A stretch of 64,000 nt of DNA, from NCBI RefSeq assembly GCF_006345805.1, contig NC_043009.1, forward strand, positions 16,492,001 through 16,556,000, written 5' to 3'. Below are positions 2,849 to 59,232 of the stretch, piece after piece. The position numbers and the translations under genes are program-made. The notes beneath the pieces were generated by a model, which was given only the letters and a program-made list of their open reading frames with translations, ran no database searches and was not told the origin of the DNA. Source of the DNA: Octopus sinensis (lineage: Eukaryota). Positions within the stretch are counted from its first letter, which is position 1; each line of letters starts with the position of its first letter.

Positions 2849-3248
2849 TAAGGCGGCGAGCTGGCAGAAACGTTAGCACGCCGGGTGAAATGCGTAGTCG
2901 TATTTCGTCTGCCGTTACGTTCTGAGTTCAAATTCCGCCGAGGTCGACTTTGCTTTTCATCCTTTCGGGGTCGATTAAATAAGTACCAGTTACGCACTGG
3001 GGTCGATGTAATCGACTTAATCTGTTTGTCTGTCCTTGTTTGTTCCCTCTGTGTTTAACCCCTTGTGGGTAGTGAAGAAATAGGTATTTCGTCTGTCTTT
3101 ACGTTCTGAGTTCAAGTTCCGCCGAGGACGACTTTGCCTTTCACCCTTTCGAGGTTGATAAATTAAGTACCAGTTGAGTACTGGGGTCTATGTGATCGAT
3201 TGTCCCCCTCTCCAGAAAATCCAGGCCTTTGCCTATAGTAGAAAGGAC
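2849..3248 (+). mobile_element. tRNA-derived SINE, family A, with a partial second unit
   Basis: Head ggcggcgagctggcagaaacgttagcacgccggg...gagttcaaattccgccgaggtcgac (A/B-box-like). The internal segment is repeated from about 3082. Flanked by (ATT)n. Confidence 0.85.
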
Positions 3249-7790: not shown

Positions 7791-8007
7791 AGAACCGTTA
7801 GCATGCCGGGCGAAATGTGTAACCGTATTTCGTCTGCCGCTACGTTCTGAGTTCAAATTCCGCTGAGGTCGACTATGCCTTTCATCCTTTCGGAGTCGAT
7901 AAATTAAGTACCAGTTACGCACTGAGGTCGATATAATCGACTTGATCCGTTTGTCTGTCCTTGTTTGTCCCCTCTATGTTTAGTCCCTTGTGGGTAATAA
8001 AGAAACA
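7791..8007 (+). mobile_element. SINE family A
   Basis: Same sequence family as 2849 and 12097. Followed by a (CT)n/(TATC)n tract at about 8060-8224. Confidence 0.85.
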
Positions 8008-12096: not shown

Positions 12097-12330
12097 TAAG
12101 GCGGCGAGCTGGCAGAATCGTTAGCACGCCGGGCGAAATGCGCAGCCGTATTTCGTCTGTCGTTACGTTGTGAGTTCAAATTCCGCCGAGGTCGACTTTG
12201 CCTTTCATCCTTTCGGGGTCGATAAATTAAGTACCAGTTACGCACTGGGGTCGATGTAATCGACTTAATACCTATGTCTGTCCGTGTTAGTCCCTTCTAT
12301 GTTTATCCCCTTGTGGGTAATAAAGAAATA
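12097..12330 (+). mobile_element. Full-length SINE family A with 14-bp target-site duplication
   Basis: TSD tgtttattcgtcaa at 12083-12096 and 12331-12344. Confidence 0.92.
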
Positions 12331-15837: not shown

Positions 15838-16055
15838 TAAAGCGACGAACTGGCAGACTCGTTAGCATGCCGGACTAAATGCTTAGCGACATGTCGTCCG
15901 TCTTTTCATTGAGTTCAAATTCCACCGAGGTCGACTTTACCTTTCATCCTTTCTGGGTCCATAAAATACGTATCAGTCGAACACTGTGGTCGATGTAACC
16001 AACTTGCGCTCCCTTCCTCTGACCTTGCCGGCCTTGTGCCAAAATTTGAAATCAG
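15838..16055 (+). mobile_element. SINE family A, diverged
   Basis: agcgacgaactggcagactcgttagcatgccgg...gagttcaaattccaccgaggtcgac. Confidence 0.75.
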
Positions 16056-22560: not shown

Positions 22561-24126
22561 CATGTCCCCGGCTTTGTTGCCTCATAACATCCAGAAAAAT
22601 GGATACTTTTTAACAAAATTTTCTACAAATACCGCTTAGATGTTGTGGCTTCAGAGTATATAGGGATTTATATGAAATAATTTTTGCGAGGGTGTGGAGA
22701 CAGGAGTTTTAGAAAATTCACACGATCTGCTTTTTTCCCTCATAACTTTTAGGAAGATGGGTATCTTTTAATGCAAATTTATACAAATGCCTTTCAAATG
22801 GCATAGATTACGATTATAAAGAAATTTGTTGGGGAAAGTTCTTCGGGGATTTTCCCCAATTTTTTAAACTACACCCTTCGAAATTGTGGAGTTGTGAGAG
22901 GTGGCATCTTTGTATGAAAAAGTTTTGAAAGCATTTTTTTACACCCCACTTCCCTCATCATCCCACTCCAGACCTATTTTGGCCAATTTTCTATTTTCTT
23001 ATTGTTTTTTTTTTTTGCCCATCAAAACCATGGGAAGAGGATTTTCGGTAATTTCTTTTTTAATTGTTAATATTTTCAGACGAAATAGTGATTTAAGGAC
23101 GAGTTGGCTGCTGTTTCTAGCACATCCAAAGACAACCTTCCTCGTTTCTTTATCACTCTCGCATGTATTGATGTTTTTCAATATTTTTCTCCATAAATAC
23201 ATTTATATGCTATAAAAAAGAAAATTTGAGAAATTATGAATTTTTTTGCAGCCCTACTCCCTGTCCCCGAATGTTTCTGCTTAGAATCTGACAAAACTTT
23301 ACAAAAGTGATGCAGCACGAAGTTTGTCAGAGAACAACACACATACACACACACACACACACACACGCACGTACACGCACGCACGCACGACGCACGCACA
23401 TACACTCACGTTCATTGCCTTTCATTTGTGTATATGCGTGTCTGTGTGTGCGCGAGTGTGTAGTGGTGTGTGTCTGTAAGAGAGAGAGAGAGAGAGCGCG
23501 TGTGTGTTACAGTTGAAGTTGTATTTAGAAATTGTGAATAAGGTTCAAATTTCGAGTACTTGTCGGTAACTTTTTCTTTCTTTTTTTCTCGTCTTTTTTT
23601 TTTTTTTCTCATCTTCTAATAGTAATTACCCAACTTTCTTGGCTCTTCTCACAGCTATCCCGCGTTCAAAAATTATACAGGCATTTAAAAAAATTTCATT
23701 CAATAAATAATAAATTACATATACACTAATAGACTAAACTGTCGGTTTTCCAAATAGCGAATGAAAACTTAAAAAAGAAAGTGAGAGACTTTGCAAATGG
23801 AAATGGAATACTCCGCAGTGAATGCAATGAATATTTAAATTTGTGAGAAATTGGATGCAGTGAATGGCAATGAATATTTAAATTTGCGAGAAATTGGAGT
23901 TAAAAAAAACTCAATAATCTTGAGAAATCGAAATTATAGGAAATTTCTTAGAACATGAATTTATAAAAATATTTCCAGACAGTCAACCCTTTAATAATTG
24001 CTCTCTTTTAGTACTTTTAGTAATTGTTACACACCTAATTAATAAACAGACTTCTCTATTACAGTGTGTGTTGTCCGGATGTTTTGCGTTCTTGTCCCAT
24101 TTTGTATTTTATATATATATATATAT

Positions 24127-25524
24127 ATAATTAATCAATATAGGGTGGCAAAAAATTTTGTAGAATTTTTTTGCCACCAGCGGCCTAGTGGGAAAAAATT
24201 AAATAGTCATAGACCATTTTTAAGTTCAACATCACAATCAAGGAACGGCCATAATAGGCCATTCACCCACTAGAAATAACAGCCAAAGCTTCAACCGCAA
24301 AATAACATCAATTCCGTAAACCAGGAGAAAATTAAAAAACATTTACCCAGTAATTTCTTATACGATGCACCGTTTCATCTACTGTTTAATGGTAAACTAA
24401 CCTGATTAAATTAAATCAAGCCAATCTTCCATAGGCCCTTAGAATCATCAGTAAGAAATAGCCAAGTCGGAACAGATATTTTCACGAGGCATTTCCGTCC
24501 CTGCCTCGGCAATATCTGACCTAAAATTTTCAAATCATCGCACTCGCGCCAAATTTATCGGCAGCAAATAAATATAAGCCGCCGATTCCATTACGGAATT
24601 AACCAGAGAATTCATAATTAATCAATATAGGGTGGCAAAAAATTTTGTAGAATTTTTTTGCCACCAGCGGCCTAGTGGGAAAAAATTAAATAGTCATAGA
24701 CCATTTTTAAGTTCAACATCACAATCAAGGAACGGCCATAATAGGCCATTCACCCACTAGAAATAACAGCCAAAGCTTCAACCGCAAAATAACATCAATT
24801 CCGTAAACCAGGAGAAAATTAAAAAACATTTACCCAGTAATTTCTTATACGATGCACCGTTTCATCTACTGTTTAATGGTAAACTAACCTGATTAAATTA
24901 AATCAAGCCAATCTTCCATAGGCCCTTAGAATCATCAGTAAGAAATAGCCAAGTCGGAACAGATATTTTCACGAGGCATTTCCGTCCCTGCCTCGGCAAT
25001 ATCTGACCTAAAATTTTCAAATCATCGCACTCGCGCCAAATTTATCGGCAGCAAATAAATATAAGCCGCCGATTCCATTACGGAATTAACCAGAAAATTC
25101 ATAATTAATCAATATAATTTTTTGCCACCCTATATTGATTAATTATGAATTTTCTGGTTAATTCCGTAATGGAATCGGCGGCTTATATTTATTTGCTGCC
25201 GATAAATTTGGCGCGAGTGCGATGATTTGAAAATTTTAGGTCAGATATTGCCGAGGCAGGGACGGAAATGCCTCGTGAAAATATCTGTTCCGACTTGGCT
25301 ATTTCTTACTGATGATTCTAAGGGCCTATGGAAGATTGGCTTGATTTAATTTAATCAGGTTAGTTTACCATTAAACAGTAGATGAAACGGTGCATCGTAT
25401 AAGAAATTACTGGGTAAATGTTTTTTAATTTTCTCCTGGTTTACGGAATTGATGTTATTTTGCGGTTGAAGCTTTGGCTGTTATTTCTAGTGGGTGAATG
25501 GCCTATTATGGCCGTTCCTTGATT

Positions 25525-25529
<5 letters not shown>
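24127..25529. repeat. Two 487-bp direct repeats followed by a 399-bp inverted (fold-back) copy, flanked by (TA)n
   Basis: Unit starts at 24127, 24614 and 25101. Arms 24718-25116 and 25131-25529 with a 14-nt loop. Confidence 0.95.
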
Positions 25530-25585
<56 letters not shown>

Positions 25586-39221: not shown

Positions 39222-39366
39222 ATGAAATCTTTTGTCGGACTGATAATTAACATTTGGATATGTCTGGGAGTGATCTTACTAGCAGCCAGTCTGACGTCGT
39301 GTGTTAGTGTGGTTACCCCATCAGATGTCACAGAAGAGGTGGATCAAAATGAGACGATGTTGTTCG
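39222..39366 (+). CDS. Probable first coding exon of a secreted or membrane protein (signal peptide)
   Basis: MKSFVGLIINIWICLGVILLAASLTSCVSVVTPSDVTEEVDQNETMLF-G|GTAAGT: K at position 2, a hydrophobic core, an N-E-T sequon, and a consensus phase-1 donor at 39367. Upstream acceptor ctttcag at 39187-39193. Confidence 0.6.
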
Positions 39367-46452: not shown

Positions 46453-46560
46453 ATCCGACGAGCTGGCAGAAACGTTAGCACACCGGGCGAAATGCTTAGC
46501 GGTATTTCGTCTGCCGTTACGTTCTGAGTTCAAATTCTGCCGAGGTCGACTTTGCCTTTC
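46453..46560 (+). mobile_element. SINE family A, 5' half
   Basis: cgagctggcagaaacgttagcacaccgggcg...gaggtcgactttgcctttc. Confidence 0.8.
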
Positions 46561-47638
46561 AAGGGGTTCATAGGTTGAAAACCACTGCTTTACATAGTAA
46601 CCCGCTATATAGAAGCATACTGCTAATGTGTTCGTTTTCTTGGATGTTAAGTATTGCATTCAGCATTCTGGTGTAGCATTCATCTAAAGATTTGCGGAGG
46701 GTAGGCTTCGGAGTCTAGCATTCACAGCCTTTCAGTCAATTGTAAAAACTGATGTGTCCAGATGTCGTTTAGCCCCAGTTCTAACTTGATTTTACTGAAA
46801 GATCTATAACCAAAGGTGGTCTAGTCATGACCATCCTGCTTTTTTTATATATCAGAACCGTATAAGTGTAATATATCCGCAGCTAAGATGTAATTTAAGG
46901 GAATTTAGGTGCTATTTGTAGTAGACTGAGCGACCACGATCAAGCTTCTTCATTGACTCATATAAATAGATCAGTGGAGTACAGTAGTGAAATCGAGTTT
47001 CAGTCATATTATTACGACTGACTGACCAAAGTATCAAAGAATAAAAGAGCAGGAACTTGTGAAATCTTGAAGAATTACTTATTTTGCATTGTTTTCTTTT
47101 TCGCCTCAAAGATCTTCTCAAGAAACAACAACCATCATCATATAAACACATTTACAAAAGTATTCAACCTTGATCTTAACATTATTTTCACATCACTTGA
47201 AGTTGCAATATAATGATCTTTCATCATCTGTAAAATTCTAAAACGGTTTGAAGCTCTATAGTTTGAAGTCGATAACGCAATTCTTGTTAGTAATATTCTG
47301 GCTATAAATGAAATCCCTCTGTTGAAATGTTGTCAGGAATGGTCTAATAAAGGCTTTGTGCAAGCACTGACAATCTCAGGGTTCCAACAGTCCAGAATGA
47401 TTTTTGAAAACCTAGAGTTCGAATCATTCGAATCAGGTGACGGGCTTTGTCAAAGCTAAACATATTTCAAAAGTATATTTCGCTCATGACAATGGCTTGA
47501 TCAAAGGTCGCAGACATGAAGTATTGCTTCACTCATGCGAAAGTATATATAAGATTGTCTTCTGTTCTAGCTGCCACTTGATTTTTAGAACTTGGTTCCT
47601 ATTGTGCCATTGCCGTCGACGTCACTATTAGTGTAGTT

Positions 47639-48276: not shown

Positions 48277-48464
48277 GTGAGTGTGCTAGCAACAGCAGGT
48301 TCCAAAAGATGGTGTTGTCGGTGCCGTAGAGGTCGCAGTGGTGGATGATTGGCTGTCTATTTTCGTTTATTCTAATTCTGTGCTACAATGCTTCAAGCGA
48401 ACTACAACGCTCTTCTTTCATATTTATACAAGAGGAGTGACAGCGACTTCATTCTATCTATCTA

Positions 48465-48499
<35 letters not shown>

Positions 48500-48500
48500 A

Positions 48501-48533
<33 letters not shown>

Positions 48534-48568
48534 ATATATATATATATATATACCCATCTATCTATCTA

Positions 48569-48641
<73 letters not shown>

Positions 48642-48647
<6 letters not shown>

Positions 48648-48757
48648 ATAGTTATCGCCATACTAATATGGCATTCTTATAAAAATAAGAAAAAAGCTTT
48701 TCCGCTTATTAGCTCCATGAGGCCATCGCCTTAAGTTAGCTATTTGATACACAACTG
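48642..48757 (-). repeat. Inverted 116-bp partial copy of the 362-bp terminal repeat
   Basis: Exact reverse complement of 50180-50295 (and of 50542-50657 and 50904-51019). Confidence 0.95.
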
Positions 48758-48829
48758 AAAGGATGAAAGGCAAAGTCGACCTCGGCGGAATTTGAACTCA
48801 GAACATAACGGCAGACGAAATACCGCAAA
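48754..48829 (-). mobile_element. SINE family A internal fragment immediately upstream of the ZCCHC7-like ATG
   Basis: ctgaaaggatgaaaggcaaagtcgacctcggcggaatttgaactcagaac...gacgaaataccgc, the reverse complement of family A. Confidence 0.85.
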
Positions 48830-48843
48830 GCAAAATAAATACC

Positions 48844-49884
48844 ATGAAAATGTTGCCCCGTATTAGTGATGAAGACGAATCTTATGAGCTGTATGATGAA
48901 TTCGATGATGATGATGAGAAGGATGAAGAAGAGGAAGAAGCAGAAAGATTAAAGGAAATAGAGAGCGAACTGTATAGTTATATCCATTATGGTTCTCAAA
49001 CTGACTTAGAAACAGAGACTGTTGATCCAACATTTTGGAGGTCTTTAGAAAAAGATAATTCAGCAGTAAATAGACCACTAATGAGGCTGAAGGTGAAGGA
49101 AGATAAAAAGAGTGCTGAAGACCCTATTTTGACAAAGACCTTCAAGTGCGGTAACTGTTCCCTTGTTGGTCATCTTAGCAGAGATTGTCGGCAAATGAAA
49201 CCACCTGTATGTTATCTCTGTGGAATTTTAGGACACAAAAGCCATGAGTGCCCAGATAGTATTTGCTTTAACTGTGAATGCCCTGGACATTTTACTCGTG
49301 ATTGCAATGCATGCAAACGCCCTTATAATGCACACTGTTCCCGATGTGACATGAAGGGCCATATGTATCATGAATGCCCTGATCTTTGGAGAAGATACCA
49401 TGCGACCACCAGAGAAGGACCTATTATGAAGACGCCATCTCGTTGTAACCCAAGGGTTTATTGCTCCAATTGTGGACTGGTTGGACATTTCGCTTATGAT
49501 TGTTATAATCTAGCCATGTACAGGTTCATCAAACCTAGTTATCCTTTCATCGTCAGCTATAAAAAGAACTTTGTGAGTAGAAAAAATTTTAAAAAAAAGG
49601 AGAAAAGATATATGAAATTTATGTTCGAAAATGATGAAATTCCAGTAAAGAAACCGAAGATTAAAGACAAAGCCAAAATAGTAAAAAAGAAAATATCCAA
49701 GAAAAAGAAGAAAAACAACCAAATTGGAAAAAAAGTACAGATTAGTAATATAGTGAAAAAGAGATTAAAAACCAGAAAAAGGAAAAACAAACTCGGTTAC
49801 AAGAAGTTCTTCCAGTTTTTTCTAACAAGTGTCAGCTTAAATATCTGTCGAGCTTTTAGTGTCAGCAACATAACTCGAGTGTAA
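48844..49884 (+). CDS. ZCCHC7: Intronless ZCCHC7/Air1-Air2-like zinc-knuckle protein (TRAMP subunit homologue), 346 aa
   Basis: Five CX2CX4HX4C knuckles (49147-49503). The Air/ZCCHC7 linker motif CPDLWRRYH(A)TT lies between knuckles 4 and 5. Acidic N-terminus with ELYSYIHY, lysine-rich NLS/NoLS-like C-terminus, ATG context aaataccATG, AATAAA at 49918 and 49978. No stops or frameshifts. Confidence 0.85.
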   Translation: MKMLPRISDEDESYELYDEFDDDDEKDEEEEEAERLKEIESELYSYIHYGSQTDLETETVDPTFWRSLEKDNSAVNRPLMRLKVKEDKKSAEDPILTKTFKCGNCSLVGHLSRDCRQMKPPVCYLCGILGHKSHECPDSICFNCECPGHFTRDCNACKRPYNAHCSRCDMKGHMYHECPDLWRRYHATTREGPIMKTPSRCNPRVYCSNCGLVGHFAYDCYNLAMYRFIKPSYPFIVSYKKNFVSRKNFKKKEKRYMKFMFENDEIPVKKPKIKDKAKIVKKKISKKKKKNNQIGKKVQISNIVKKRLKTRKRKNKLGYKKFFQFFLTSVSLNICRAFSVSNITRV

Positions 49885-50070
49885 ACAATTGGACATGGCA
49901 GATGAACAAGGACAGAAAATAAAAGACTGAGATGTGTACAATAACAGAAAAGATTGAGATGTGCAGACTGAATGGTAAATAAACTGAAATTATTGAAAAC
50001 AAGTGGATGTATTCCACCGAAACTAGGTAAATAAAACCATCGAACAGAGATTGTCGGAAGCGACACCTAC

Positions 50071-50132
50071 TGGCTGGCTACGCTGCATTGAAAAGGGGCA
50101 ATACCCCGAAACGCGTCTGTAGCTGCCGGTCA
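50071..50132 (+). ncRNA. Type I hammerhead ribozyme, copy 1 (U3:A8 core variant)
   Basis: Stem I GCTGCA/TGTAGC extended by TGGCTGGC/GCCGGTCA; core TTGAAAA; stem II GGGG-caata-CCCC; GAAAC-GC-GTC with palindromic ACGCGT stem III. Predicted cleavage after C50117. Confidence 0.8.
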
Positions 50133-50432
50133 AGTAGTGTGGAGCGACTGACCTCCCTTGTTCGAAGGTTATATGGATACAGTTGTGTATCAAATAGCTA
50201 ACTTAAGGCGATGGCCTCATGGAGCTAATAAGCGGAAAAGCTTTTTTCTTATTTTTATAAGAATGCCATATTAGTATGGCGATAACTATTATTTTCCGGG
50301 AACGCTGCCGCTGTTCTCTTTTAGAGAGACTTAGTTATTTTAATATTTCTATTATTGAAAACAAGTGGATGTATTCCACCGAAACTAGGTAAATAAAACC
50401 ATCGAACAGAGATTGTCGGAAGCGACACCTAC

Positions 50433-50494
50433 TGGCTGGCTACGCTGCATTGAAAAGGGGCAATACCCCGAAACGCGTCTGTAGCTGCCGGTCA
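50433..50494 (+). ncRNA. Type I hammerhead ribozyme, copy 2
   Basis: Identical motif 362 bp downstream. Predicted cleavage after 50479. Confidence 0.8.
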
Positions 50495-50794
50495 AGTAGT
50501 GTGGAGCGACTGACCTCCCTTGTTCGAAGGTTATATGGATACAGTTGTGTATCAAATAGCTAACTTAAGGCGATGGCCTCATGGAGCTAATAAGCGGAAA
50601 AGCTTTTTTCTTATTTTTATAAGAATGCCATATTAGTATGGCGATAACTATTATTTTCCGGGAACGCTGCCGCTGTTCTCTTTTAGAGAGACTTAGTTAT
50701 TTTAATATTTCTATTATTGAAAACAAGTGGATGTATTCCACCGAAACTAGGTAAATAAAACCATCGAACAGAGATTGTCGGAAGCGACACCTAC

Positions 50795-50856
50795 TGGCTG
50801 GCTACGCTGCATTGAAAAGGGGCAATACCCCGAAACGCGTCTGTAGCTGCCGGTCA
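50795..50856 (+). ncRNA. Type I hammerhead ribozyme, copy 3
   Basis: Identical motif. Predicted cleavage after 50841. Confidence 0.8.
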
Positions 50857-51073
50857 AGTAGTGTGGAGCGACTGACCTCCCTTGTTCGAAGGTTATATGG
50901 ATACAGTTGTGTATCAAATAGCTAACTTAAGGCGATGGCCTCATGGAGCTAATAAGCGGAAAAGCTTTTTTCTTATTTTTATAAGAATGCCATATTAGTA
51001 TGGCGATAACTATTATTTTCCGGGAACGCTGCCGCTGTTCTCTTTTAGAGAGACTTAGTTATTTTAATATTTC

Positions 51074-51111
<38 letters not shown>

Positions 51112-51140
51112 GTCTGTCTATCTATCTATCTATCTATATA

Positions 51141-51183
<43 letters not shown>

Positions 51184-51203
51184 CTACCCATCTATCTATC
51201 TAT

Positions 51204-51985
51204 CGTGTGAGACGAGTCGGTTTATCAGCTGAGTCTATCGTCAATATTGTCACGCCTCCTTCCTTCAAACGGGAAAGAAGAGCTACTTTCATCATCCTTG
51301 TGGCTATGGCGAAAGAATGTATCTGGTGGACGCGTCTGAAAGGATTGGAGACAAACACTTTCCTCTCTTGTCAATCTCTCATCAACTTCTTCAAGTACCA
51401 CTTGAAAAGGAAAGTGAGAGTAGAGAGGCAAGTTTTGTCTAGCGAATGTTTTAAAAAAAGATGGGTGAATTAGCAAGGATGGCACGTATGAATGACGAAG
51501 CCACCTTGAGCATAATCCTATGAACCCAGAAATTGAAAACAGAGGGTTACCCACTTGCAAACAAATGTGGTAACATATAACAATATTGACCAAGGTTACC
51601 GTGGTCTTTTTCGTAGACTTTTCTTCCCACGGATAAACCTTACTTGCTTTCCCCTTTACACCATATATCATAACACTGTGATACACGATTCCTATTGATC
51701 GTTTTTTTTCCTCTTCCTCTTTTTTTCCCTTTTTTCTTCTTTTTTCATTTCTCTTTTCTTTTGTTCCTTTTCCTTTTCTCTTTTTTTATTTTTATTTTTT
51801 TATTTTTTATTTTATTTTATTTTTTTTGTTCTTTTCTTCCCTTTTACGATCCCTCTTGATCGAAAACCTACGCCATCCCCTTTTTTTGTTTCTTTTGTTT
51901 TTCGTTTTTTTCATCCCCCAAAAGAAAAGCTCTACCTTGTAACTTGTCCCATCTGTGTGCAGCCCTGTGTGGCCAATAAAGAAAC
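51204..51985 (+). mobile_element. 5'-truncated Tx1/L1-clade LINE 3' end
   Basis: FIILVAMAKECIWWTRLKGL...FFKYHLKRKVRVERQVLSSECFKKRW resembles a Tx1 ORF2 C-terminus. T-rich 3' UTR, AATAAA at 51975, (TATC)n tail. Confidence 0.7.
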
Positions 51986-59059: not shown

Positions 59060-59232
59060 ATAAGGCCCGAAATTTTGGGGGAAGGGGTCAGTCGATTAAA
59101 TCGACCCCACTACTGAAAGGATGAAAGGCAAAGTCGACCTAGGCAGAATTTGAACTCAGAACGTAAAGACATACGAAATATCTCTAAGCATTTCGCTCGG
59201 TGTGCTAACGTTTCTGCCAGCTGGCCGCCTTA
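59060..59232 (-). mobile_element. SINE family A
   Basis: Reverse complement of the family A head and body. Confidence 0.8.

What the first reader, a model, noticed from the sequence alone, without database searches (positions are those of the whole stretch)
48642..51079. Hammerhead-ribozyme/pLTR cassette carrying a ZCCHC7 (Air1/2, TRAMP) gene as cargo
Seen: (TA)n | 116-bp inverted terminal repeat | antisense SINE piece | intact intronless five-knuckle ORF | 104-bp spacer | three 362-bp direct repeats each with a hammerhead | (TA)n. No RT or endonuclease and no poly(A) tail. Established: Penelope-like elements have an inverted 5' pLTR and tandem 3' pLTRs with minimal type I hammerheads; some target microsatellites; giant PLEs (Terminons) carry ribozyme-associated captured ORFs; Air1/2-ZCCHC7 are the RNA-binding subunits of TRAMP, which feeds RNAs to the nuclear exosome. 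Inference: a non-autonomous, ribozyme-processed retroelement has captured a host RNA-surveillance gene, or a PLE enzyme retrocopied a ZCCHC7 mRNA in trans. The protein could be a decoy or modulator of TRAMP, a nucleocapsid-like chaperone for element RNA, or a neutral or new retrogene. I know of no description of such a cargo, but could not search the literature.
Basis: partly seen in the sequence, partly recalled or inferred. Interest (0 to 1): 0.92.

Follow-up and report, generated by a model that had tools for sequence, protein, structure and literature searches.

The report
Ribozyme repeat fused to gene retrocopy
A very young, spliced copy of an octopus RNA-surveillance gene (ZCCHC7-like) was pasted into a TA microsatellite fused to three identical hammerhead-ribozyme repeats, most likely as a one-off by-product of Penelope-type reverse transcription and not as cargo of a mobile family.

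Summary
The window is Octopus sinensis chromosome CM016871.1.

- **The ORF is a retrocopy.** It is not the ZCCHC7 orthologue. The intron-containing, syntenic parent lies on another chromosome, next to the copper-chaperone gene, in three Octopus species.
- **It copies the spliced mRNA.** The copy runs from the 5'UTR exon, which supplies the "SINE piece", to just past AATAAA. 538 sampled bases are identical and one substitution was seen. There is no poly(A).
- **The 3' junction is a microhomology fusion.** The copy joins the 362-bp unit at a 5-6-nt microhomology (TTATT).
- **The hammerhead is real but non-canonical.** Rfam finds none. A descriptor finds one type I motif per unit with a U3-A8 core, a variant published for Penelope-like elements.
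- **A second element supports the mechanism.** A cargo-less, unrelated 487-bp element 24 kb upstream has the same (TA)n, inverted-arm and tandem layout and a canonical hammerhead core.

Best reading: one target-primed reverse-transcription event that switched template from a retrozyme RNA to an mRNA. Only one such ORF is annotated, so "cargo of a mobile family" is unsupported. No partner PLE was found, and the empty site could not be tested.

The parts
48455..48641 (.). Left half of the compound (TATC)n/(TGTC)n/(TA)n microsatellite that served as the insertion target
   Evidence: TRF and direct reading. It shares the pattern (TGTC)n(TATC)n(TA)n-ACCCATC(TATC)3 with the right flank.
48642..48757 (-). 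116-nt inverted arm, the antisense copy of unit positions 192-307. It corresponds to the 5' inverted truncated copy typical of PLE-type insertions.
   Evidence: 100% complementary to 50180-50295, 50542-50657 and 50904-51019. Its last base, G at 48757, is shared with the start of the mRNA copy.
48757..48843 (+). Copy of the parental 5'UTR exon 1, which is itself an exonised SINE fragment
   Evidence: The 88-nt string 48756/7-48843 matches L002 8025-8112 exactly. The parent then continues with the donor GTTAAGT. The SINE nature is shown by at least 10 other copies in the window.
48844..49884 (+). Intronless 346-aa ORF: a processed copy of the ZCCHC7-like (Air1/2 family) coding sequence with five CCHC knuckles
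   Evidence: Pfam zf-CCHC. Collinear with the five knuckles of yeast Air2, PDB 2LLI, E=7e-13. 289/291 aa identical to XP_036367406.1. The exon blocks are spread over about 24.7 kb of L002, and every matched tile has 0 mismatches.
49885..49988 (+). Copy of the parental 3'UTR, with AATAAA at 49978-49983 and no poly(A)
   Evidence: Matches the O. vulgaris parent at L003 46707-46810 with one mismatch. The parent continues GTTATTAGG where the window continues ATTATTGAA.
49989..49994 (+). Junction microhomology (A)TTATT, shared by the parental 3' end and the start of the unit
   Evidence: Direct comparison of the window, L003 and the unit.
49989..51079 (+). 3.01 tandem copies of a 362-bp retrozyme-like unit, 100% identical. 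GC is 41.4%. The unit RNA folds to -122.7 kcal/mol (z=-7.0).
50082..50123 (+). Type I hammerhead motif with a U3-A8 core, unit 1: GCUGCA-UUGAAAA-GGGG(CAAUA)CCCC-GAA-ACGCGU-C|UGUAGC. Predicted cleavage is after C50117.
   Evidence: Custom descriptor scans. The MFE fold shows helices I and II. The U3-A8 variant is documented in PLE hammerheads (PMC4209133). Not detected by Rfam.
50444..50485 (+). Same hammerhead motif, unit 2. Predicted cleavage is after C50479.
50806..50847 (+). Same hammerhead motif, unit 3. Predicted cleavage is after C50841.
51077..51203 (.). Right half of the compound microsatellite. The array ends in ...TTTCTATTAT and merges into (TA)n.

Best explanation
This is a chimeric processed retrocopy made in one integration event by a Penelope-like (PLE) or retrozyme-mobilising reverse transcriptase.

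**Proposed sequence of events (inferred)**
1. A (TA)n microsatellite was nicked.
2. Reverse transcription was primed at the AUUAU site of a circular or multimeric 362-nt hammerhead retrozyme RNA. It ran for three full units.
3. At the same AUUAUU site, the nascent cDNA switched by 5-6-nt microhomology to the 3' end of a spliced ZCCHC7-like mRNA, 6-11 nt past its AAUAAA.
4. The RT copied that mRNA up to its SINE-derived 5'UTR exon.
5. A second priming on retrozyme RNA (twin priming or self-priming) gave the 116-nt inverted arm that closes the 5' end.

**Outcome**
The result is a single, very recent extra copy of a TRAMP-subunit gene inside an intron of another gene. Its intact ORF reflects youth, not proven function.

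**Shown versus inferred**
- Shown: the parent-copy relationship, intron loss, the junction sequences, the identity of the repeats, the hammerhead architecture and the (TA)n setting.
- Inferred: the enzyme, the circular template, and the order and mode of priming.
For: 1. **The parent is elsewhere.** The 90% cluster of the ORF holds XP_036367406.1 on O. sinensis CM016878.1, plus O. vulgaris and O. bimaculoides genes. All are multi-exon (19-37 kb) and next to an HMA+Sod_Cu gene.
2. **Processed copy.** Eight exon blocks were located in L002 between 8025 and 32745. All tiles that matched had 0 mismatches, for 538 nt in total. One TTA>TTT change was seen. The upstream ATG is created by the exon 1-exon 2 junction, as in the parental isoforms.
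3. **3' junction.** The parent reads AATAAACTGAAgTTATTagg. The window reads AATAAACTGAAaTTATTgaaaac. The unit reads TTTCTATTATTgaaaac. There is no poly(A).
4. **Ribozyme repeats.** Three 100% identical units each carry a type I hammerhead with a U3-A8 core. That covariation, and the 6/4/1-2-bp helix pattern with a palindromic helix III, are described for PLE and metazoan hammerheads (PMC4209133).
5. **Retrozyme criteria.** The unit meets the published criteria for non-LTR retrozymes: 170-400 nt, tandem, low GC and highly self-paired (PMC7229834).
6. **PLE layout and target.** An inverted 5' copy plus tandem copies is the PLE layout, and (TA)n is the target of Hydra and Naiad PLEs (PMC8557442).
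7. **Second element.** A cargo-less element at 24127-25529 has the same layout in (TA)n, with a canonical CUGAUGA...GAAAC motif. A relaxed hammerhead scan of the 64 kb hits only these two elements.
8. **Active PLEs nearby.** The sister species O. vulgaris has 31 PLE families with 336 recently active insertions (PMC13282606).
9. **Template form.** The array starts and ends at the same unit position, 129 nt away from the predicted cleavage site. This fits a circular or multimeric template.
Against: - No autonomous PLE sharing the 362-bp unit was found. No other copy of the unit could be retrieved, because no octopus genome search is available.
- The hammerhead is not recognised by Rfam, and its cleavage is untested. 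Published PLE minimal hammerheads cleave poorly in vitro (PMC4209133).
- The local 58-nt fold is no more stable than its shuffles.
- The 5' junction has only 1 nt of overlap, which is uninformative.
- The empty site in O. vulgaris and long-read support were not testable.
- The last exons of the O. sinensis parent lie outside L002. A 44-nt segment of the copy (49816-49859) was not found in L002 or L003.
Confidence: 0.72

Rival explanations
1. The composite is one member of a non-autonomous PLE/retrozyme family that carries ZCCHC7 as heritable cargo. It would be transcribed as a unit, processed by the hammerheads and re-mobilised.
For: The ORF is framed by an inverted arm and tandem repeats. That arrangement was judged sufficient in cis for trans-mobilisation of an NRPS gene in Adineta vaga (PMC3846280). 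LTR-mediated chimeric retrocopies can be retroposed again (PMC5131818). The ORF is intact.
Against: Exactly one contig encodes this product. The 90% cluster contains only the parental genes. The copy includes the parental UTRs and is almost identical to the parent, so it has had no independent history. No further unit copies lie in the 64-kb window or in about 140 kb of other loci. Unannotated copies cannot be excluded.
Confidence: 0.1
2. There were two or more independent events. A retrozyme or PLE-repeat insertion (arm plus tandem) landed in (TA)n, and a separate retrocopy of ZCCHC7 later landed exactly between the arm and the array, or the events came in the reverse order.
For: The cargo-less 487-bp element shows that arm plus tandem can exist alone. 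LINEs are active in Octopus (PMC13282606).
Against: There is no poly(A) tail and no target-site duplication around the gene copy. No spare bases lie at either junction. A 5-6-nt microhomology sits exactly at the 3'UTR-unit junction. All parts are equally young: the repeats and the arm are 100% identical, and the copy shows about 0.2% divergence from the parent.
Confidence: 0.08
3. Assembly artefact: a chimeric long read or a collapsed or mis-joined repeat created the composite.
For: Microsatellite-rich regions and perfect tandem repeats are error-prone. Only one assembly carries the locus.
Against: The junctions are biologically structured: exact exon-exon joins, a microhomology switch and a perfect inverted arm. 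They mirror a second independent element in the same window. NCBI annotates a protein at this locus.
Confidence: 0.05
4. The chimera arose at the RNA level. A retrozyme RNA with hammerhead-generated ends was ligated to a ZCCHC7 mRNA fragment, and the ligated RNA was then reverse transcribed as a single template.
For: Retrozyme RNAs are substrates of host RNA ligases (PMC7229834).
Against: The junction lies 129 nt from the predicted hammerhead cleavage site and sits in a 5-6-nt microhomology. Both features point to an RT template switch, not end ligation.
Confidence: 0.05

Closest known systems
Metazoan non-LTR retrozymes (Cervera & de la Pena 2020, PMC7229834; Li, Clavereau & Pollet 2026 preprint 10.64898/2026.07.22.740005)
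   Same: Tandem units of about 170-400 nt with one type I hammerhead per unit, low GC and a highly self-paired RNA. Mobilisation by PLEs is presumed. The units here are 362 nt x 3.01 and 41% GC, with a fold z-score of -7.
   Different: Here the array is fused to a spliced host mRNA copy and to an inverted arm. The hammerhead core is U3-A8. Copy number, circRNA expression and self-cleavage are unknown.
Penelope-like elements with pseudo-LTRs, including the (TA)n-targeting Hydra and Naiad clades (Craig et al. 2021, PMC8557442; Cervera & de la Pena 2014, PMC4209133)
   Same: An inverted 5'-truncated copy plus tandem 3' copies, a hammerhead in the repeats, insertion into (TA)n, and a U3-A8 core variant reported in Cercyon PLEs.
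   Different: There is no RT/GIY-YIG ORF. Homology of the unit to the pLTR of any autonomous PLE has not been shown.
Penelope-mediated mobilisation of host genes in Adineta vaga (Arkhipova et al. 2013, PMC3846280)
   Same: A host gene framed by direct and inverted PLE repeats, and attributed to PLE enzymes acting in trans.
   Different: The rotifer NRPS copy kept all its introns and had an 8-bp target-site duplication. Here at least seven introns are gone, so the template was a mature mRNA. The junction shows a microhomology template switch.
Chimeric retrocopies formed by RT template switching (LTR-mediated: Tan et al. 2016, PMC5131818; LINE-mediated bi- and tripartite chimeras, e.g. PMC2104539)
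   Same: A retrocopy fused without a gap to retroelement sequence, with short microsimilarity at the fusion point, and flanked on both sides by element sequence.
   Different: The element partner is a hammerhead retrozyme or PLE repeat, not an LTR element or a LINE. The mRNA is copied nearly full length. The target is a (TA)n microsatellite.
Air1/Air2-ZCCHC7, the zinc-knuckle subunits of TRAMP
   Same: Five CCHC knuckles collinear with yeast Air2 (PDB 2LLI, E=7e-13). An LWRRY motif lies between knuckles 4 and 5. Databases name the parent ZCCHC7.
   Different: This is a duplicate of the octopus gene, not the orthologue. Its expression and any TRAMP association are unknown.

Membership tests
Metazoan non-LTR retrozyme | Short tandem repeats of about 170-400 bp | tested here: met
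   362 bp x 3.01 copies at 100% identity.
Metazoan non-LTR retrozyme | One type I hammerhead ribozyme per unit | tested here: inconclusive
   A descriptor finds one motif per unit with correct helices I, II and III, GAAA and a UC cleavage site, but with a U3-A8 core. Rfam is negative. The U3-A8 variant is published for PLE hammerheads. Catalysis was not tested.
Metazoan non-LTR retrozyme | Low GC (<45-50%) and a highly self-paired unit RNA | tested here: met
   GC is 41.4%. MFE is -122.7 kcal/mol, z=-7.0, and 0 of 100 shuffles fold as well.
Metazoan non-LTR retrozyme | Dispersed multicopy family expressed as circRNA | not testable with these tools
   No octopus genome or transcriptome search is available. 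No further copies were found in the window, in other loci, or in viral or metagenome contigs.
Penelope-like element (autonomous) | ORF encoding a PLE-type RT, with or without a GIY-YIG endonuclease | tested here: not met
   The only long ORF is the zinc-knuckle protein. No RT or EN domain was found in the 10 other long window ORFs scanned (of 22 listed), most of the rest being overlapping microsatellite frames.
Penelope-like element (non-autonomous derivative) | Pseudo-LTR layout: tandem direct copies plus an inverted 5'-truncated copy | tested here: met
   A 116-nt perfect inverted arm plus three tandem units. The layout is as described in PMC8557442.
Penelope-like element (non-autonomous derivative) | Insertion into a microsatellite, (TA)n for Hydra and Naiad | tested here: met
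   Both ends abut (TA)n. The same holds for the second element.
Penelope-like element (non-autonomous derivative) | Repeat unit homologous to the pLTR of an autonomous PLE in the same genome | not testable with these tools
   No octopus PLE sequence could be fetched. The supplement of PMC8557442 is not held.
Terminon / Athena giant PLE | Giant, telomere-associated element with an EN-deficient RT and many ORFs | tested here: not met
   The element is 2.4 kb, interstitial at about 16.5 Mb of a 72-Mb chromosome, and has a single non-RT ORF.
Processed retrocopy (retrogene) | An intron-containing parent elsewhere, with the copy collinear with the spliced mRNA including its UTRs | tested here: met
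LINE-type processed retrocopy | 3' poly(A) tail and flanking target-site duplication | tested here: not met
   There is no A-run after the 3'UTR, which is fused directly to the unit. A target-site duplication cannot be determined in the microsatellite.
Template-switch chimeric retrocopy | Microsimilarity at the fusion points | tested here: met
   The 3' fusion has 5-6 nt, (A)TTATT. The 5' fusion has only 1 nt.
Air1/2-ZCCHC7 family | Five tandem CCHC zinc knuckles collinear with Air2 | tested here: met
   PDB 2LLI matches residues 101-221 at E=7e-13, and 3NYB matches knuckles 4-5. The Cys and His columns are invariant across the aligned octopus, O. bimaculoides and Lottia proteins.
Air1/2-ZCCHC7 family | IWRxY-type motif between knuckles 4 and 5 that contacts the poly(A) polymerase (recalled from the Trf4-Air2 structure literature) | tested here: met
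   LWRRY at residues 181-185. W182, R183 and R184 are invariant in alignment A2. The definition of the motif is from memory.
Air1/2-ZCCHC7 family | Physical membership of a TRAMP complex | not testable with these tools
   This needs biochemistry.

The most novel reading that the evidence does not exclude
In octopus, and perhaps in other PLE-rich invertebrates, the enzyme that mobilises hammerhead retrozymes may regularly switch templates onto cellular mRNAs. That would create poly(A)-less processed retrogenes framed by ribozyme repeats. Such composites would keep the cis signals needed for further mobilisation. This locus would then be the first caught example of a PLE/retrozyme route to retrogene birth, and it would give direct sequence evidence for rolling-circle copying of retrozyme circRNA.
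Probability: 0.25. Interest if true: 0.7.

Novelty: new variant of a known kind. Interest (0 to 1): 0.5.

Why it matters
Which reverse transcriptase makes retrogenes outside mammals is poorly known. How animal hammerhead retrozymes integrate is still a model, not an observation.

This single, almost unmutated locus preserves every junction of one event:
- entry into (TA)n;
- three exact unit copies whose boundaries do not coincide with the ribozyme cleavage site;
- a microhomology switch onto a mature mRNA;
- an inverted arm.

It therefore gives testable evidence for two things. First, retrozyme arrays are laid down by target-primed, multi-round reverse transcription. Second, the same enzyme can produce spliced gene copies. 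This complements the earlier rotifer case, in which PLEs moved intron-containing genes.

It also warns annotators. The "ZCCHC7-like" protein at this locus is a days-old-looking duplicate, not the orthologue. That the gene encodes a TRAMP subunit is probably incidental.

Tried and rejected
- **Rfam.** Searches at gathering score over the whole window and at E<=10 over 48600-51100 gave no hammerhead or other ribozyme. The only hits were chance snoRNA-like ones in the acidic coding stretch.
- **Plain motif search.** CTGANGA...GAAA gave only chance-level hits outside the element.
- **Other unit copies, protein route.** The 56-aa minus-strand ORF of the unit is not in the protein collection and has no homologue.
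- **Other unit copies, DNA route.** Exact-pattern scans of metagenome and viral contigs found nothing. K-mers of both units are absent from the other loci.
- **Empty-site test.** I used exon 1 of the host gene (window 39222-39366) to reach the O. vulgaris orthologue. No candidate came back.
- **PLE consensus sequences.** The supplement of Craig et al. 2021 is not held, so no partner PLE could be sought.
- **Scripting on the parental loci.** Loci L002-L004 never appeared in the scripting sandbox. The exon map was therefore built from tiled pattern searches, not a full alignment, and dN/dS was not computed. With one substitution it would be meaningless anyway.
- **Second hammerhead.** A possible second motif at 49995-50030 also has UUGAAAA...CGAAAC. 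I rejected it because helix I does not pair and helix II is flanked by unpaired bases.
- **Relation between the two units.** The 362-bp and 487-bp units share no similarity, so they are separate families.
Full report
**Where the window comes from**

The exact product of the ORF is encoded on one record, Octopus sinensis GCA_006345805.1 chromosome CM016871.1, at about 16.54 Mb. The window is 37% GC and rich in SINE copies and microsatellites.

**Check of the observation**

Reading 48300-51500 together with TRF and the repeat finder confirms the layout.

- A compound (TATC)n/(TGTC)n/(TA)n microsatellite ends at 48641.
- A 116-nt arm at 48642-48757 is 100% complementary to positions 192-307 of each downstream unit.
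- A SINE-like piece follows, with at least 10 other copies in the window.
- An uninterrupted 346-aa ORF lies at 48844-49884. It matches zf-CCHC and has five CX2CX4HX4C knuckles.
- After the ORF come 104 bp of spacer.
- Next are 3.01 copies of a 362-bp unit at 100% identity, 49989-51079.
- The microsatellite then resumes.

No RT or endonuclease ORF is present. Ten of the window's 22 long ORFs gave no Pfam hit, and most long ORFs are microsatellite translations.

**The hammerhead**

Rfam 15 finds no ribozyme, either at gathering score or at E<=10 over the element. CTGANGA...GAAA does not occur in the unit.

By eye, the stretch 50082-50123 reads GCUGCA UUGAAAA GGGG-CAAUA-CCCC GAA A-C-GC-G-U C | UGUAGC. 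It has:
- a 6-bp helix I directly abutting the core;
- a 4-bp helix II;
- the GAAA box;
- a 2-bp helix III with a 2-nt loop, inside the 6-nt palindrome ACGCGU;
- a UC cleavage site.

The only departure from the consensus is U3 and A8 in place of C3 and G8. Those two positions pair with each other.

A descriptor written for this architecture, allowing any Watson-Crick 3-8 pair, finds exactly three hits in 64 kb, one per unit. About 0.02 hits are expected per Markov shuffle.

Cervera and de la Pena (2014) describe this same U3-A8 covariation in hammerheads of Cercyon PLEs. They also give 6-bp helix I, 4-bp helix II and 1-2-bp helix III with a palindromic loop as the typical metazoan type I design, which works as a dimer (PMC4209133).

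The local 58-nt fold shows helices I and II but is no more stable than its shuffles. The whole 362-nt unit is strongly structured, at -122.7 kcal/mol and z=-7.0.

**What the ORF is**

Its best solved relative is yeast Air2. All five knuckles are collinear (2LLI, E=7e-13). Databases name its relatives ZCCHC7.

It is not the orthologue. The 90% cluster holds four proteins:
- this one;
- XP_036367406.1 on a different O. sinensis chromosome, CM016878.1;
- two O. vulgaris isoforms.

Those genes, and the O. bimaculoides gene, span 19-37 kb. All sit next to a gene with HMA and Sod_Cu domains, so that is the syntenic parental locus. The window protein is 289/291 identical to the O. sinensis parent.

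**Mapping the copy on the parent**

The parental loci were not available to scripts, so I tiled the window sequence as search patterns.

- The 88 nt at 48756/7-48843 match L002 8025-8112 exactly. The parent then continues with a GT donor. The "antisense SINE piece" is therefore the parent's SINE-derived 5'UTR exon.
- Exon 2 follows in the parent 1.9 kb downstream. The junction ACCA|TGAAAATG creates the upstream ATG also seen in parental isoforms.
- Further blocks lie at L002 12186-12322, 18911-18980, 21841-21910, 28651-28743, 30129-30153 and 32715-32745.
- Every tile that matched did so with 0 mismatches, for 538 nt in all. Tiles that failed span exon junctions.
- One substitution was seen, TTA to TTT, which gives L249F.

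At least seven introns are therefore removed, and the copy is about 0.2% diverged.

The spacer is the parental 3'UTR. It matches the O. vulgaris parent through AATAAACTGAA with one mismatch. The last exons of the O. sinensis parent lie beyond L002. A 44-nt segment (49816-49859) was found in neither L002 nor L003. It is probably an alternative exon or splice site.

**The junctions**

- *3' junction.* After AATAAACTGAA the parent continues gTTATTagg. The window continues aTTATTgaaaac, which is the start of the unit (preceded in the array by TTTCT). The switch lies within a shared (A)TTATT, 6-11 nt after the poly(A) signal. There is no poly(A) tract.
- *Right end.* The array ends ...TTTCTATTAT and merges into (TA)n. 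The array therefore begins and ends at the same unit position, 129 nt from the predicted cleavage site.
- *5' junction.* The arm and the 5'UTR copy share a single G.
- *Flanks.* Both flanks carry the same compound pattern, (TGTC)n(TATC)n(TA)n-ACCCATC(TATC)3. This may be a long target-site duplication or simply the structure of the microsatellite. I could not decide which.

**A second element**

At 24127-25116 there are 2.03 copies of an unrelated 487-bp unit. A palindromic junction follows, then a 399-nt perfectly inverted arm at 25131-25529. The whole is again enclosed by (TA)n.

Its sense strand carries AUUUCUUA CUGAUGA [long helix II] GAAAC GGUGCAUC GUA | UAAGAAAU, with a fold z-score of -4.2. 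A relaxed hammerhead scan of the whole window hits only these two elements, six motifs in all. This is the same architecture without cargo. It shows that such insertions are recent and recurrent here.

**Mechanism**

The following fits every junction.
1. Target-primed reverse transcription started at a nick in (TA)n.
2. It initiated at the AUUAU site of a circular or multimeric retrozyme RNA.
3. It made three rounds of copying.
4. It switched template by microhomology to the 3' end of a mature ZCCHC7-like mRNA.
5. It copied that mRNA to its 5'UTR.
6. It closed the 5' end with a second, inverted cDNA primed on retrozyme RNA.

The literature supplies the components:
- Tandem plus inverted copies and (TA)n targeting in PLEs (PMC8557442).
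- Retrozymes as tandem hammerhead units probably mobilised by PLEs through circRNA (PMC7229834).
- Retrozymes as pLTR derivatives (10.64898/2026.07.22.740005).
- Self-priming and palindromic inverted junctions in PLEs (PMC3846280).
- Microsimilarity-guided template switches that make chimeric retrocopies (PMC5131818).
- Recently active PLE families in O. vulgaris (PMC13282606).

The enzyme, the circular template and the order of priming are inferences.

**Rivals**

- *Mobile cargo family.* Disfavoured, because only one such ORF is annotated and the copy is essentially identical to the parent, UTRs included. Unannotated copies cannot be excluded.
- *Independent insertions.* Disfavoured by the absence of poly(A), target-site duplication or filler, and by the microhomology at the fusion.
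- *Misassembly.* Unlikely given the structured junctions and the parallel second element. It needs reads to exclude.
- *RNA-level ligation.* Disfavoured, because the junction is far from the cleavage site.

**Function**

The ORF is intact because it is young. There is no evidence for selection, expression, or a decoy or chaperone role. It lies in sense orientation inside an intron of a gene whose CDS starts at window 39222. If transcribed into the array, the RNA could be cut by the hammerheads. This is speculation.

**Novelty and score**

Host-gene capture between PLE repeats is known, but with introns retained (PMC3846280). Template-switch chimeric retrocopies are known for LINE and LTR enzymes. 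I found no description of a spliced mRNA copy fused to a hammerhead retrozyme array in the papers searched.

I rate it a new variant of a known kind, with interest 0.5. It is mechanistically informative for retrozyme and PLE biology.

Noticed in passing
window 24107-25585: A second, cargo-less element in (TA)n. It has 2.03 x 487-bp units (24127-25116), a palindromic head-to-head junction and a 399-nt perfect inverted arm (25131-25529). A canonical CUGAUGA...GAAAC type I hammerhead with an 8-bp helix I and a long branched helix II lies on the minus strand of the units. The element is unrelated in sequence to the 362-bp unit.
   Followed up: yes
window 48455-48641 and 51077-51203: Both flanks of the insertion carry the same compound microsatellite pattern, (TGTC)n(TATC)n(TA)n-ACCCATC(TATC)3. 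This is either an unusually long target-site duplication of about 125 bp or the native periodic structure of the microsatellite.
   Followed up: partly
window 49995-50030 (and the same position in each unit): A second stretch with the same UUGAAAA ... stem-loop ... CGAAAC layout (GUGGA-UGUAU-UCCAC). Helix I does not pair, and helix II is flanked by unpaired bases. It may be a degenerate duplicate of the hammerhead module.
   Followed up: partly
L002 8025-8112 (O. sinensis parental ZCCHC7-like gene): The parent's first, non-coding exon is an exonised SINE fragment. The gene's 5' end apparently lies inside a SINE. The exon 1-exon 2 junction creates an upstream in-frame ATG (MKM...).
   Followed up: partly
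window 49816-49859: A 44-nt segment of the retrocopy ends in TTTTAG and restores the frame to the shared C-terminus SVSNITRV. It is absent from L002 and L003. It is probably an alternative exon or acceptor of the O. sinensis parent that lies beyond the fetched locus.
   Followed up: partly
window 39222-39366: The retrocopy lies in sense orientation inside an intron of a gene with a 166-aa product. Its first exon encodes a signal-peptide-like N-terminus (MKSFVGLIINIWICLGVILLAAS...). No homologue was retrievable with the word-indexed search.
   Followed up: partly
window 2900-2966, 3083-3150, 7825-7891, 12145-12214, 15880-15953, 46493-46561, 59108-59190 and others: At least 10 copies, 73-97% identical, of the same tRNA-like SINE core that forms the parental 5'UTR exon.
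   Followed up: no
L003 38630-40659; L002 2437-3796 and 38908-39829: Long-period tandem arrays near or within the parental genes: 93 bp x 21.8, 89/179 bp x 15, and 389 bp x 2.3. They were not examined for ribozymes.
   Followed up: no
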